From the NCBI GenBank assembly GCA_964057225.1, contig OZ059899.1:8866001-8930000 (forward strand): 64,000 nucleotides of DNA, given 5' to 3'. The position numbers and the translations under genes were made by a program. The stretch comes from Auanema rhodensis (Eukaryota > Animalia > Nematoda). The notes under the pieces were generated by a model, which had not been told where the DNA came from, did not search any database, and saw only the letters and a list, made by a program, of their open reading frames with translations. How positions within the stretch are numbered: the first letter of the stretch is position 1; each line of letters starts with the position of its first letter. Below, in pieces: positions 1 through 4,195 of the stretch.

Positions 1-402
1 GTTAAGGATTTTTGCAAAGTTTTTTTTTCAATGGTGCTCCTTCATTATCACTGTTATTATTGATGTCTCTTGTTCTCTATGCCTTTCTTTTTTAGAAATA
101 TTTTCCAAATTCTTTAGGAATTTCTTAACTTCCAAAGTGTCCTTATTTTGTTTTATTATTTAAATTATATTGCTATAAAGATTTTTATGTTCAATTACTT
201 TTATATAATTTATTGAAATACTAATGAAAAGATAATAATATAATCAACTATTCCAAAAAATAACCTGTTATATATTAAAAAGTATTATTACTAGATTAAA
301 AATAATAAGAATATGCACTAATTTTATGATAATTGTATGTGAAGCATTATTATCATCAGATGAAGTATTACTTGTATTCAATTAAAAACACATTATATAT
401 AA

Positions 403-432
403 AGAGAGAACGAGAAAGTGAGAGAACGAGAA

Positions 433-491
<59 letters not shown>

Positions 492-493
492 GG
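403..493. repeat. (GA)n microsatellite preceded by two copies of gagaacgagaaagtga
   Basis: Directly visible dinucleotide run just downstream of the stop of the first minus-strand gene. Confidence 0.95.
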
Positions 494-523
494 AGATACC
501 TATGTACATCCATGACCCATCTT

Positions 524-3093
524 TTATGGTAAATATCCATCTATTTTTTCCATGAACTGTTTTTCCAATTCTTCGAAGTTTTCTATAAGGGCTATCCTTA
601 ACGGCTTTTCTAAGGAATCATCCTTCTCCAACAACTTTTTTGCAACAAAAGCAAATGTATCGCAATCATTTCGGAAAGCCTGAAAAGAGAAAAATGAATT
701 TATTAAAGATTTAAGAAATTATTTACAAACCAATTCAAGTTTTTTCTTTTTGACTAAAAATCTCTCCAAATCTATTTCATTCAACGAAGTTATTTTTTCA
801 TCACTAAAGTTAAATTGTATTCAATACATTCAGTGATAATATATTAATCACCGTAAACGGCTTCGAAGTTCATCATCAAGATCATCAGGTTTTGATAGAT
901 TAGACAATCGTAGCTTTTTATTATCTTAATCGCATAACTTATTTAATAATATTGAACTTTATCTTACCACTTCCACTACAACTCACAGCTTTAACTGTCA
1001 TTAAAGCATTATTTTGAATATCTTTAAGTTCGTGAAAGTACTGAGATACTTTCAAACATGTTGTTTGGAATGAAGCTCTAGTCTAAACAATTTACTTAAG
1101 AATAAGATAAGAAAAACTTTGAATCATTTTTACCTGAGCTGTAGGATCACCTACTTTAGATGGCGGAGAATTTTCAAAACTATTTTCTTCTACGTTCACT
1201 GATATGCTTTGTCTTTTATTTTCTGTTTGTTGTCGTGGTAAATTAATAGATGATCGAACTTGTTTAGGAATTAAGCTTGTTGGTAGAAGCTTCACAGTTA
1301 GTGGATTGAAGGAAGAGGTTGAAGAAGGTTCTTCCTTAGATACTGCAGCTTGAAGCTCATTAACATCATCTGTTGATTCACTTCTTATTTTTCTGCAAAA
1401 TATCGATATTTATCTGGTTTCAAACTAAATACCAAAATTATAGCAATCATGTATTTACTGACGTTTTACGAATTAGAAGCTGCTCTTCGTGAATGGAATC
1501 GTATGACTGTATGTTTGGACTCGGAGTTCGTGATTTTGGAGAATCTATATCATCTATAGCTGGCTCGTCGATTGTTGTTGGTTCCAATATTTTTAAAGTT
1601 ACATCCTCAAATAAAAATAGGTTTTTGATTCCATAAAATATAAAATAAATACTTTTAAATTGATCTTCAATTGGTTTGTAGGAGCGACATTTTTTTCAGA
1701 CTTATTCAAGAGCAGTGGCGTTTCAGAATTTTCGCTAGTGGACATTGTCTCTGGATTTTCCTTATCATCTGAAAATGATGCCCTGTTTTCATTTTCTAAC
1801 ATTTGATTTATAATTCGTTTAGAATTATATTGACCATTCAATTGTTTGTCGCTTAGAGAGCGTGGGCTGTTCGAATCTCGTTTAGAATGTTCTGATGATG
1901 TACTTCTACTTCGAGAATATCGAGAAGATCTATATTATATTTTTTGATTAAAGAAAATTTTATCTGTTAGAGCAACCTTTCTTTTTCTCTTCGACGGCCT
2001 CTTTTCTCATCTTCTAATCTGTCTTCACGATCAGAGTATCGTTTACGGTAGTTGTAGGACTCACGTGAAGATGAACGAGAACGCTGATCTGTTCGACTTC
2101 TCGTTTTTCTAGAATTGTATATGCATTATTATATTTAATTCATATTAAGAATACCTGGAATCTGTACTAGCTGAACTGAGAACAGATGAACTTCGAGATC
2201 TGCTACGATCACGATGTCTGTAAACATATGTGAATTAATAATATCAAGAGAATATATATTTGTACTTGCTATTCCGATAACTTTTCCGACCATAGCTTGA
2301 TGATGATCTTCCACGATTCTTCACGTCTTAATCAAATTTCAATATTATGAATATATTTCAAATCTCACGAATAGCTTTATATTGAGCAAATCGTCGAATA
2401 TCTTTAAACCATGTTAAATCACATTTGTGACCTAATATATCATCTTCGGAGAATCTTAAAGAAAAACATTTGTTTGTTATCTTGTTTGTTTGTTAGAGTT
2501 TAGTGTTAATATTACCTTTTCATGGCAAGCTTAGCATCATCACGAGTTTCAAAACGAACTGCAACAAACAGTCGGATATTATCAGGACTTGATCTTACGA
2601 AATCAAATGAAACTGGACCTACTTTATCCTCGAAAAAATTCCTATAAAGTCAATAATTCATTGTTATATAAATGAAAAAAGATTCAATTTATTTACTTGT
2701 ATGTAACCTTTACCGCATATCACATTCATATTGTAAAAATCTATATATGAAGATTCAAGAAACAAGTAAACCGAGGATAATATACTAACAACAATAAGAA
2801 ACATAAAAATTGTAATGTAATCCTTGCATTTTTAAGAATAAAATAGCTTTAACAGCTGATTTAAAACTGGAAATTATAATAATTATAAAATATAAATTTG
2901 TATTCTGATAACACATTCCATGTTAAATATGCCTGATAATATATATATTTTCATCTATTAATACATACTTTATATCATTAGTTGACATGGAACCAGGTAA
3001 ACCACGTATAAATATGGTATGTTTTGATTCAGGTACATCTTCTTCATTTATTCTTCTGGAGCGTTGATGATGATGATAGTTCATGTAAGACAT
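524..3093 (-). CDS. Multi-exon RRM + RS-rich protein with C-terminal periphilin-1-like domain
   Basis: Spliced translation: MSYMNYHHHQRSRRINEEDVPESKHTIFIRGLPGSMSTNDIK-NFFEDKVGPVSFDFVRSSPDNIRLFVAVRFETRDDAKLAMKR-FSEDDILGHKCDLTWFKD (RRM), then RS/RY-rich exons (HRDRSRSRSSS, SSRYSRSRST), a low-complexity middle (ORFs 1599-1841 and 1092-1295), and last exons LERFLVKKKKLEL-AFRNDCDTFAFVAKKLLEKDDSLEKPLRIALIENFEELEKQFMEKIDGYLP*. GT-AG phases are consistent where checked. Confidence 0.85.
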
Positions 3094-3435
3094 TTCAATT
3101 TAATGATCCTAATAGTTTAAAAATTAAAATTTTGTATAGTTTATATGAAAAGAATATGTTCTACAATTTGAAAAACAAAGAAAAAGAAGAATAAGAATAA
3201 GAAGGAAAACTGATATAAATACTTTTTAAATCAACACATATATGAAATAGTAAAACGTTTGTATATTTGTTACTATGTAAGATAAAAAGAAAGAATGAAA
3301 AAGCTAACATTTCACTAGCAGATTTGAAAAATATAGAAATACATGCTGAAATGAAAATTTATGTTTCCCAGGTAACCCACATGACTGAAATATATCATAG
3401 AAAGCATAATCATAATTATACCTAAGCGTCATGTT

Positions 3436-3461
3436 ATATATATATATATATATATATATAT
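3436..3461. repeat. (AT)n microsatellite
   Basis: Directly visible. Confidence 0.9.
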
Positions 3462-4195
3462 TCTATACACATCATAAAAGAAGTAAAATTAATTATAATG
3501 AAGAAAAAATGAATTTTTTTAAAACTGAAATGTTTGAAATTTCAATAAAATTATTGTTAGTTACTGTTAAATTAATAACAAACTTTATACAATATATGTA
3601 TATAAACAAACAATAGTTTTTCTATGAATATATGTACTCAAAATGATATTTTTTGTTGTTAAAATTGAATTTAGTCAGATTATAGAAGTAGAATTGTATT
3701 TGCTTTCAATTCAAATATTAGGAGAGAGGAGATTTTGGAGGAGATGAATATTTTTATAAAAATATCTTGTAATTTATAAAATGAAAAATAAAACTGAAAA
3801 TTACCATTCATTGTAAAGAATCAATATATTTTTTTTTGTCTATTATGTTTTTCCTTTATATACATTTTGATCAATCTTTCATCCATTTCTGAACCTCTTA
3901 TGACGTGATTCTCTCTCAAAGCTATTAGGTTGTGTAGTAACGGTAACTACTAGATACTAATGAAAGACTGAAATGTATATATAATTAATACAAGATGAAT
4001 AATTTTAAAAGATTGGTTAATCTAAAACCTTATAAAATTGAAAAAAAACTTTTCCAAAAAATTTATTATTATCATACAGCTTGAATTACATATCTGGAAC
4101 AATTATCACCCATTTCGGCACAAATATACTGTTAACGTATGATAAGAATAAACTAAAAATGTCTGATATCAATCATTCACAGTAAATGAAACTAA

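What the first reader, a model, noticed from the sequence alone, without database searches (positions are those of the whole stretch)
524..3093. RRM-RS protein ending in a periphilin-1 (HUSH subunit) C-terminal domain in a nematode
Seen: the last two exons encode KKKKLELAFRNDCDTFAFVAKKLLEKDDSLEKPLRIALIENFEELEKQFMEKI. This aligns without gaps to the human periphilin-1 C-terminal helical domain as I recall it (KTKEIEQVYRQDCETFGMVVKMLIEKDPSLEKSIQFALRQNLHEIGERCVEEL), sharing RxDCxTF, LxEKDxSLEK and ALxxN. Established: in vertebrates this domain dimerises and binds TASOR in the HUSH silencing complex, while a disordered Arg/Tyr-rich N-terminus binds RNA; HUSH is generally described as vertebrate. 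Here the domain is joined to a folded RRM and an SR-like RS tract. Inference: a possible ancestral or nematode-specific RNA-recognising periphilin linking nascent RNA or splicing to chromatin silencing. The ORF track misses this because the relevant exons are short.
Basis: partly seen in the sequence, partly recalled or inferred. Interest (0 to 1): 0.82.

Follow-up and report, generated by a model that had tools for sequence, protein, structure and literature searches.

The report
Worm periphilin gene with an RRM
This is a real, expressed 14-exon nematode gene that joins an RNA-binding RRM and an Arg/Ser-rich tract to the C-terminal helical domain of periphilin; it is the counterpart of C. elegans Y57G11C.9, which public databases already list as the periphilin-1 (PPHLN1) ortholog, so the homology is not new but its function is still untested.

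Summary
Observation confirmed. The last exon (window 527-679, minus strand) matches Pfam Periphilin_C (E 3.4e-14, 53 bits against a cut-off of 27) and solved human periphilin-1 (PDB 6SWG, E 1.2e-8). It is predicted to fold as a helical hairpin whose only PDB match is 6SWG.

Spliced RNA contigs from four runs of one study remove 13 GT..AG introns. They link the RRM exons to the periphilin exons, giving one 540-codon reading frame.

The gene is collinear with Auanema P0001 and with C. elegans Y57G11C.9 (Q9U203). RRM plus Periphilin_C recurs across chromadorean nematodes, and an ESM Atlas cluster shows it in flatworms, so it is not nematode-specific.

The homology is already public. UniProt names relatives "Periphilin-1 C-terminal domain-containing protein". 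A 2022 paper citing WormBase lists Y57G11C.9 as the PPHLN1 ortholog, and a 2025 paper writes "melo-1/periphilin 1".

The human dimer-interface residues (L326, L333, I337) and the TASOR-contact residue L356 are kept as L, L, L and I. Membership of a HUSH-like complex is untested. An earlier scan note reports a TASOR-like gene in this genome, which I did not verify. The scan had also noted this same locus from the overlapping window (s1-410051).

Verdict: a new member of a known kind, of moderate interest.

The parts
2969..3093 (-). Exon 1 coding part: start codon at 3093, His-rich N-terminus, the RINEEDVPESK motif and RRM strand beta-1 (RNP2, IFIRGL). RNA contigs reach about 3110.
   Evidence: Translation; RNA contigs and the 2641|2969 junction; 75% identity to P0001.
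2516..2641 (-). Exon 2: core of the RRM, including the RNP1-like LFVAVRF.
   Evidence: Pfam RRM_1 E 0.012 on this exon alone; 88% identity to P0001; alignment A3.
2369..2454 (-). Exon 3: end of the RRM and the conserved WFKDIRRFAQY extension.
1835..2326 (-). Exons 4-7 (2266-2326, 2155-2217, 1977-2108, 1835-1929): Arg/Ser-rich tract with some Tyr. 53% R+S, 18 RS/SR dipeptides, 6 Tyr.
   Evidence: Junctions; per-exon translation; composition.
1134..1768 (-). Exons 8-10 (1653-1768, 1463-1605, 1134-1392): poorly conserved Ser/Thr/Pro/Glu-rich linker.
   Evidence: weak alignment to orthologs.
968..1082 (-). Exon 11: conserved nematode motif (YFHELKDIQNNALMTVK).
   Evidence: Aligned to P0001 and P0017; junctions.
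852..924 (-). Exon 12: the LRLSNLS motif, conserved in nematode orthologs, followed by an acidic stretch.
   Evidence: Alignment A2.
731..803 (-). Exon 13: first part of helix 1 of the periphilin-type domain, ending in KKKKLEL.
   Evidence: junctions 803|852 and 679|731; orthologs match Pfam profile positions 12-29 here; helix in the model.
524..679 (-). Exon 14 coding part with the stop codon (524-526): end of helix 1, the turn and helix 2 of the Periphilin_C domain. The 3' UTR continues to at least 500.
   Evidence: Pfam PF25234 E 3.4e-14; PDB 6SWG E 1.2e-8; AF2 pLDDT 94.9 with helices 2-19 and 21-49; Foldseek finds only 6SWG_B.

Best explanation
Shown: window 524-3093 (minus strand) is an expressed 14-exon gene for a 540-residue protein. 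It is the ortholog of Auanema CAI4224897 and of C. elegans Y57G11C.9 (Q9U203), which is listed as the PPHLN1 ortholog and is very probably the gene called melo-1. The protein has an N-terminal RRM, an Arg/Ser(/Tyr)-rich disordered tract, a variable linker, and a C-terminal periphilin-type helical hairpin. Inferred mechanism: the RRM and RS tract bind RNA in the nucleus. The hairpin homodimerises through the conserved Leu/Leu/Leu patch that corresponds to human L326, L333 and I337. The hairpin's outer hydrophobic face, which corresponds to human L356, takes up a helix of a partner, most likely a TASOR-like scaffold. The protein would then be the RNA-recognising arm of a HUSH-like chromatin silencing assembly, with a folded RRM added to the job done in vertebrates by the disordered Arg/Tyr-rich N-terminus. 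My confidence is about 0.95 for identity and homology, about 0.7 for a dimerising RNA-binding adaptor, and about 0.4 for TASOR-like partnership and silencing. The confidence figure given is for the whole statement.
For: Domain homology. Fold: with 6SWG_B the top or only PDB match. One mRNA: where a 1602-nt contig joins exon 14 to exon 2 and other contigs join exon 2 to exon 1; all 13 introns are GT..AG, and one search shows an open frame of 540 codons. Orthology and conserved architecture in Rhabditina, Tylenchina, Ascaridomorpha and Spirurina. Flatworm cluster with the same two domains. Functional residues defined by mutagenesis in PMC7544229 are kept as L16, L23, L27 and I46 of the last exon. 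L16 is invariant and L23 nearly invariant across 27 nematode and vertebrate sequences. TASOR-like proteins exist in invertebrates (PMC10578480), and an earlier scan note reports one in this genome (not verified by me).
Against: No binding, localisation or silencing data exist for any nematode member. I could not examine the TASOR-like gene, and no MPP8-like gene is noted in this genome. The RS tract, the NMD-regulated isoforms of the C. elegans ortholog (PMC5777819) and its central place in a neuronal splicing network (PMC12084653) point equally to an SR-like RNA-processing role. The Foldseek E-values are weak (0.2-0.3) because the domain is small. The RRM lacks one of the two RNP1 aromatic residues (LFVAVRF), so RNA binding is assumed, not shown.
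Confidence: 0.45

Rival explanations
1. The protein is an SR-like RNA-processing factor. The RRM and RS tract act in splicing or mRNP assembly, and the periphilin-type hairpin serves only for self-association or for a partner unrelated to TASOR. It would have no role in chromatin silencing.
For: An N-terminal RRM followed by a tract of 53% R+S. The C. elegans ortholog produces NMD-target isoforms together with rsp-5, rsp-6, rsp-7, swp-1 and asd-1. melo-1 is a high-degree node in a neuronal splicing network, which is correlative evidence. Reviews place the origin of HUSH in cartilaginous fish.
Against: The only known function of this domain is dimerisation and TASOR binding. The TASOR-contact position stays hydrophobic in all nematodes. 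The hairpin is one of the two best-conserved parts of the protein across nematodes. In other nematodes the domain is also joined to DNA-binding-type modules such as FLYWCH, which fits a chromatin role better than a splicing role.
Confidence: 0.4
2. There are two separate genes, an RRM-RS gene and a small periphilin-like gene, wrongly merged into one model.
For: Some database orthologs lack the RRM (P0007, P0013, P0025, P0026). Assembled contigs can in principle be chimeric.
Against: A single 1602-nt spliced contig spans exon 14 to exon 2, and independent contigs in four runs give identical junctions. The frame is continuous over all 14 exons. More than 15 orthologs carry both domains in one protein. 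P0025, which appears to lack the RRM, still holds the end of the RRM, so it is a truncated model.
Confidence: 0.03
3. The similarity to periphilin is chance or convergent resemblance between amphipathic helices.
For: The domain is short and helical. The Foldseek E-values are only 0.2-0.3. One coiled-coil false positive, P0006, appears in the phmmer list.
Against: Pfam E 3.4e-14, twice the curated cut-off. Periphilin-1 is the single PDB hit at E 1.2e-8. Vertebrate periphilins are recovered from 1.84 billion representatives with this exon alone. The non-heptad motif R-x-D-C-x-T-F is shared.
Confidence: 0.01

Closest known systems
C. elegans Y57G11C.9 (UniProt Q9U203, 553 aa; PPHLN1 ortholog per WormBase; very probably melo-1, WBGene00013307) and its nematode orthologs, for example Auanema sp. 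JU1783 CAI4224897
   Same: The same order of parts: His/Asn-rich start, the RINE-DVPESKHT motif, RRM, WFRDIRR, RS tract, the LRLSSL motif and a C-terminal Periphilin_C domain. The proteins are collinear by tblastn, and the last exon is 80% identical to Auanema and 52% to C. elegans.
   Different: Different species. The RS tract here is shorter and less regular than the long (RS)n runs of the C. elegans protein, and the linker is not conserved. I inferred that Y57G11C.9 is melo-1 from two papers that each name 'the' C. elegans periphilin-1 ortholog; I did not check this in WormBase.
Human periphilin-1 (PPHLN1), HUSH subunit; structure 6SWG with TASOR
   Same: A C-terminal helical hairpin with R-x-D-C-x-T-F, L-x-x-K-D-x-S-L-E and A-L-x-x-N. 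The dimer-interface residues L326, L333 and I337 and the TASOR-contact residue L356 are kept as L, L, L and I. Both have an Arg-, Ser- and Tyr-containing disordered region upstream, and in both the domain sits at the C-terminus.
   Different: The vertebrate proteins found here have no RRM. Identity in the domain is only about 40%. The first third of the Pfam profile is weakly matched in nematodes. No evidence exists for TASOR or MPP8 partnership or for H3K9me3 silencing.
Flatworm 'putative RRM domain-containing protein' cluster of the ESM Atlas (59 members, representative 739 aa)
   Same: Carries Periphilin_C (98% of members) together with RRM_1 (20%). It is the second-nearest cluster to the Auanema ortholog by language-model features (0.93, 197 of 256 features shared) and is found again by shape.
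   Different: Known to me only through automatic cluster labels. I could not fetch or align any sequence. RRM_1 is called in only a fifth of members, which may reflect divergent RRMs or truncated models.
Classical SR proteins (for example C. elegans rsp-1 to rsp-8)
   Same: An N-terminal RRM followed by an RS-rich tract. The C. elegans ortholog shares their NMD-coupled isoform regulation.
   Different: The RS tract is internal, not C-terminal. A long non-RS linker and a folded C-terminal hairpin follow it. The RRM shows no specific affinity to SR-protein RRMs; the best PDB matches are the nucleolin, PES4 and hnRNP H RRMs at E 1e-6 to 1e-5.

Membership tests
Pfam PF25234 Periphilin_C domain family | Profile match above the curated gathering score | tested here: met
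   53.4 bits against 27, E 3.4e-14, profile positions 30-77 of 84, on the last exon alone. Orthologs score 35-61 bits.
Pfam PF25234 Periphilin_C domain family | Sequence similarity to the solved periphilin-1 domain | tested here: met
   6SWG_A is the only PDB hit, E 1.2e-8, 48 ungapped columns.
Pfam PF25234 Periphilin_C domain family | Helical-hairpin fold | tested here: met
   AF2 model of the last exon: pLDDT 94.9, helices 2-19 and 21-49. Foldseek's only PDB match is 6SWG_B, TM 0.68, rmsd 2.2 A, but E is only 0.29. The ortholog's full domain gives the same top hit at probability 0.97.
Pfam PF25234 Periphilin_C domain family | Hydrophobic dimer-interface residues (human L326, L333, I337) | tested here: met
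   L16, L23 and L27 of the last exon. L16 is invariant and L23 is in at least 90% of 27 sequences.
HUSH complex (periphilin subunit in the functional sense) | TASOR-binding surface (human L356; L356R abolishes binding) | tested here: inconclusive
   The position is Ile here and L, V, I or M in other nematodes. This is compatible with binding but does not demonstrate it.
HUSH complex (periphilin subunit in the functional sense) | A TASOR ortholog with a periphilin-binding segment in the same genome | not tested
   Earlier scan note s1-397580 reports a 1,333-residue TASOR-like gene on another piece. I had no access to that DNA. The literature reports TASOR-like proteins in invertebrates generally.
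HUSH complex (periphilin subunit in the functional sense) | An MPP8 (chromodomain plus ankyrin) partner | not tested
   No note in this genome mentions one, and only one 64-kb window was readable.
HUSH complex (periphilin subunit in the functional sense) | A disordered Arg/Tyr-rich N-terminal region needed for silencing | tested here: inconclusive
   An R/S-rich tract with 6 Tyr in 113 residues is present. It is RS-type rather than R/Y-type and lies behind a folded RRM.
HUSH complex (periphilin subunit in the functional sense) | Transcription-dependent H3K9me3 silencing of intronless or foreign DNA | not testable with these tools
   Needs genetics and chromatin profiling. No published phenotype was found.
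Nematode RRM-periphilin orthogroup (Y57G11C.9 / melo-1) | RRM_1 at the N-terminus and Periphilin_C at the C-terminus in one polypeptide | tested here: met
   Spliced contigs link all exons. The frame is open. The domains are called on exons and on the 75-88% identical ortholog.
Nematode RRM-periphilin orthogroup (Y57G11C.9 / melo-1) | Collinear conserved motifs (RINE-DVPESKHT, WFRDIRR, LRLSSL) | tested here: met
SR protein family (strict definition: N-terminal RRM(s) and a C-terminal RS domain of at least 50 residues with more than 40% RS) | RS domain content and length | tested here: met
   113 residues with 53% R+S and 18 RS/SR dipeptides.
SR protein family (strict definition: N-terminal RRM(s) and a C-terminal RS domain of at least 50 residues with more than 40% RS) | RS domain at the C-terminus | tested here: not met
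   About 300 further residues, including a folded hairpin, follow the RS tract. The protein is SR-like, not an SR protein.

The most novel reading that the evidence does not exclude
Protostomes (nematodes and flatworms) keep an ancestral HUSH-like core. In it an RRM-bearing periphilin dimer docks on a TASOR-like scaffold and directs chromatin silencing from nascent RNA. On this reading the vertebrate HUSH complex is a derived version that lost the RRM, and the complex did not originate in cartilaginous fish. This would make HUSH biology testable in C. elegans through melo-1.
Probability: 0.3. Interest if true: 0.75.

Novelty: new member of a known kind. Interest (0 to 1): 0.4.

Why it matters
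Reviews of HUSH still date the complex to cartilaginous fish. Yet a clear periphilin C-terminal domain with its dimer and partner-contact residues intact is conserved across nematodes, and apparently flatworms, where it is fused to an RRM. If the TASOR-like gene reported in the same genome is its partner, two of the three HUSH core subunits predate vertebrates. The question of how HUSH reads RNA could then be studied in a genetically tractable worm, where a folded RRM offers a defined RNA-binding surface. The value lies in the hypothesis and in the expressed, well-supported gene model. The homology itself is already in Pfam, UniProt and WormBase.

Tried and rejected
1. All three word-index searches, using the C-terminal regions of Auanema, C. 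brenneri and Thelazia proteins, returned only nematodes. They could not show whether other invertebrate phyla have the domain, and a blank from that tool means little.

2. The single exhaustive phmmer search with the 51-residue exon found only nematode-like and vertebrate-like sequences at E up to 0.001. Nematode-to-vertebrate hits are themselves near that threshold, so the absence of other phyla is not evidence of loss.

3. I recalled that periphilin was once filed under Pfam Lge1. No Lge1 match appears in the current Pfam even at E up to 10, and no paper links the two. I dropped the idea.

4. I looked for a specific RRM relative, for example RBM7 of the NEXT complex. The best PDB matches are generic RRMs: nucleolin, PES4 and hnRNP H. 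This gave no lead.

5. The ESM Atlas feature search with the C. elegans domain alone gave no usable hit. The whole Auanema protein did give hits.

6. Literature searches for melo-1, Y57G11C.9, PPHLN1 in worms, DUF3715 in C. elegans and periphilin in flatworms found no functional study.

7. My first hand-built model missed the intron at 1769-1834 and left the exon 10/11 junction ambiguous. The RNA contigs settled both.

8. Exons and stored orthologs were used instead.
Full report
**What is in the sequence**

The feature lies on the minus strand. The last coding exon, window 527-679, translates to a 51-residue peptide that starts AFRNDCDTF and ends GYLP. The exon before it, 731-803, ends in KKKKLEL.

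The last exon alone matches Pfam PF25234 (Periphilin_C) at E 3.4e-14 and 53.4 bits, against a curated cut-off of 27. In a phmmer search of all PDB sequences its only hit is human periphilin-1 of the TASOR-periphilin core complex, 6SWG, at E 1.2e-8 over 48 ungapped residues. The match is not a chance resemblance.

**Gene model and expression**

Four public runs from one study hold contigs that are at least 99% identical to the window and lack 13 segments. Each missing segment is bounded by GT..AG on the minus strand, so these are spliced RNA.

- One 1602-nt contig runs from the 3' end (500-678) through every exon to exon 2 (2516-2640).
- Other contigs join exon 2 to exon 1 (2968-3110).
- The junctions define 14 exons: 3093-2969, 2641-2516, 2454-2369, 2326-2266, 2217-2155, 2108-1977, 1929-1835, 1768-1653, 1605-1463, 1392-1134, 1082-968, 924-852, 803-731 and 679-524.
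- A per-exon frame check shows canonical splice sites throughout, no in-frame stop, and 540 codons plus the stop.

One caveat remains: these are assembled contigs, not single long reads, and the run records do not state that the libraries are RNA.

Exons were searched by reference, and the closest stored ortholog served as a proxy for the full domains.

**Anatomy**

- Exons 1-3 encode an RRM. It has RNP2 (IFIRGL), an RNP1-like LFVAVRF, and a conserved WFKDIRRFAQY extension.
  - Exon 2 alone gives RRM_1 at E 0.012.
  - The three exons are 75-88% identical to Auanema P0001, whose RRM_1 scores 34.5 bits against a cut-off of 20.7.
- Exons 4-7 are 53% Arg+Ser, with 18 RS/SR dipeptides and 6 Tyr in 113 residues.
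- Exons 8-10 are a poorly conserved linker.
- Exons 11 and 12 carry two motifs conserved among nematodes: YFxxLKxIQ...L.TVK and LRLSSL.
- Exons 13-14 encode the periphilin-type domain.

**Fold**

With a 27-sequence alignment, AlphaFold2 models the last exon as two helices (residues 2-19 and 21-49) at mean pLDDT 94.9. Foldseek against the PDB returns a single match, 6SWG_B, with TM 0.68 and rmsd 2.2 A. Its E-value is only 0.29, as expected for so small a domain.

The full domain of the Auanema ortholog gives a longer hairpin preceded by an extra helix. 6SWG_B is again the top hit at probability 0.97, and every other hit has E above 4. An ESM Atlas shape search lists the chordate periphilin-1 cluster first.

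**Functional residues**

Prigozhin et al. (PMC7544229) showed the following.

- Human L326, L333 and I337 form the dimer interface.
- L356 contacts TASOR.
- L326A, L333A/I337A and L356R all abolish TASOR pull-down, and L356R abolishes silencing.

In the alignment these positions fall on L16, L23, L27 and I46 of the last exon. This mapping takes chain position 39 as residue 312, a numbering under which all four human residues land on the right letters. Across 27 nematode and vertebrate domains, L16 is invariant, L23 is present in at least 90%, and the L356 position is always hydrophobic. This fits a conserved dimer and a conserved partner-binding face, but it does not prove either.

**Relatives**

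An exhaustive phmmer search with the last exon against 1.84 billion representatives gave 51 hits at E up to 0.001.

- The best hits are nematode proteins of 500-660 residues, and most carry RRM_1 at the N-terminus and Periphilin_C at the C-terminus.
- They come from Auanema sp. JU1783 (80% identity), Diploscapter, Angiostrongylus, Mesorhabditis, several Caenorhabditis species, C. elegans Y57G11C.9/Q9U203, Parascaris, Globodera, Thelazia and Bursaphelenchus.
- Filarial and Ascaris members appeared.
- The remaining hits are vertebrate periphilins, which score 100-146 bits on the Pfam model and have no RRM.

The window's gene is collinear with the Auanema and C. elegans proteins over its whole length. 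The organism is therefore a rhabditid nematode near Auanema.

Two ESM Atlas searches add a cluster of 59 flatworm proteins labelled with Periphilin_C (98%) and RRM_1 (20%). It is second only to the nematode cluster in similarity to the Auanema ortholog. The RRM-periphilin architecture is therefore probably older than nematodes. This rests on automatic cluster labels, because I could not retrieve those sequences.

**What is already known**

- UniProt auto-names several of these proteins "Periphilin-1 C-terminal domain-containing protein".
- A 2022 paper citing WormBase 2021 lists Y57G11C.9 with human ortholog PPHLN1 (PMC9118485).
- A 2025 paper writes "melo-1/periphilin 1" for WBGene00013307 and notes that it has no established role in splicing (PMC12084653).
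- As early as 2011, a Brugia protein was seen to share a 14-residue stretch (12 of 14 residues identical) with periphilin-1, and this was read as molecular mimicry (PMC3050887).
- y57g11c.9 makes NMD-target isoforms, as SR-protein genes do (PMC5777819).
- I found no functional study of the gene.
- Schopp et al. report TASOR-like DUF3715-SPOC-DomI proteins in invertebrates (PMC10578480).

**Mechanism**

- Shown: homology, fold, architecture, expression and conservation.
- Inferred, at about 0.7: a nuclear RNA-binding protein that dimerises through the hairpin.
- Inferred, at about 0.4: the hairpin docks on a TASOR-like scaffold, so the protein is the RNA-reading arm of a HUSH-like silencing assembly.

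An earlier scan note (s1-397580) reports an intact TASOR-like gene elsewhere in this genome. No MPP8-like gene is noted.

The main rival, also at about 0.4, is an SR-like RNA-processing factor that uses the hairpin for self-association or for another partner. The two readings are not strictly exclusive.

**Verdict**

The gene is a new species' member of an orthogroup that the databases already annotate, so the homology is not a discovery. "Nematode-specific" is probably wrong. The HUSH link is a reasonable hypothesis that is testable in C. elegans but has not been tested. The same locus had already been noted by the scan from the overlapping window (s1-410051).

Noticed in passing
window 2642-2968 (intron 1) and 2516-2682: Intron 1 is 327 nt, while the other twelve are 42-70 nt. 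One RNA contig (X4, record 8) runs from exon 2 into the intron as far as 2682 instead of splicing to exon 1. This could be intron retention or an alternative 5' form. It is of interest because the C. elegans ortholog is known for NMD-target isoforms.
   Followed up: partly
window 3095-3112: The RNA contigs end at 3109/3110, exactly at a TTAG|G acceptor-like site 15-17 nt upstream of the ATG. Two contigs carry 5 further letters that do not lie on the window. This is compatible with SL trans-splicing, but the letters were not shown.
   Followed up: no
window 418-499: A (GA)n microsatellite of about 40 units, preceded by a duplicated GAGAGAACGAGAAAGT unit, lies just beyond the gene's stop codon. 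It is in or next to the 3' UTR. The read tool skipped it as a repeat.
   Followed up: no
window 300-403: RNA contigs of two runs (X2 and X4) cover this stretch on the far side of the (GA)n repeat. It is either a longer 3' UTR of this gene or the end of a neighbouring transcript.
   Followed up: no
proteins P0010 and P0053 (Mesorhabditis spiculigera) and P0013 (Meloidogyne hapla): In other nematodes Periphilin_C is also combined with other nucleic-acid-binding modules. Mesorhabditis has FLYWCH zinc finger plus Periphilin_C, and RRM plus FLYWCH plus Periphilin_C. Meloidogyne has a repeated Cys-x2-Cys...His N-terminus plus Periphilin_C. The hairpin may be a portable docking module.
   Followed up: partly
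proteins P0015, P0016, P0018, P0021 (nematode-like fragments) and P0037, P0039, P0043, P0046 (vertebrate-like fragments): Fragmentary gene models in both groups diverge into unrelated sequence at the same point, just before the [YF]-[RK]-x-D-C motif. This is where the window has its phase-0 intron (679|731). It suggests an intron position shared by nematodes and vertebrates.
   Followed up: no
proteins P0032, P0071, P0072, P0073, P0074 (filarial nematodes): Filarial database models of 1065-1174 residues carry the Periphilin_C domain in the middle, followed by TAF1_subA or elongin-type domains. These are probably merged neighbouring genes rather than a true fusion.
   Followed up: no
protein P0006 (1960 aa): This protein was hit by the 51-residue query in 26 separate stretches at 29% identity and lacks the R-x-D-C-x-T-F motif. 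It is almost certainly a repetitive coiled-coil false positive.
   Followed up: partly
window 3425-3465: A (TA)n microsatellite lies in the AT-rich intergenic stretch upstream of the gene.
   Followed up: no
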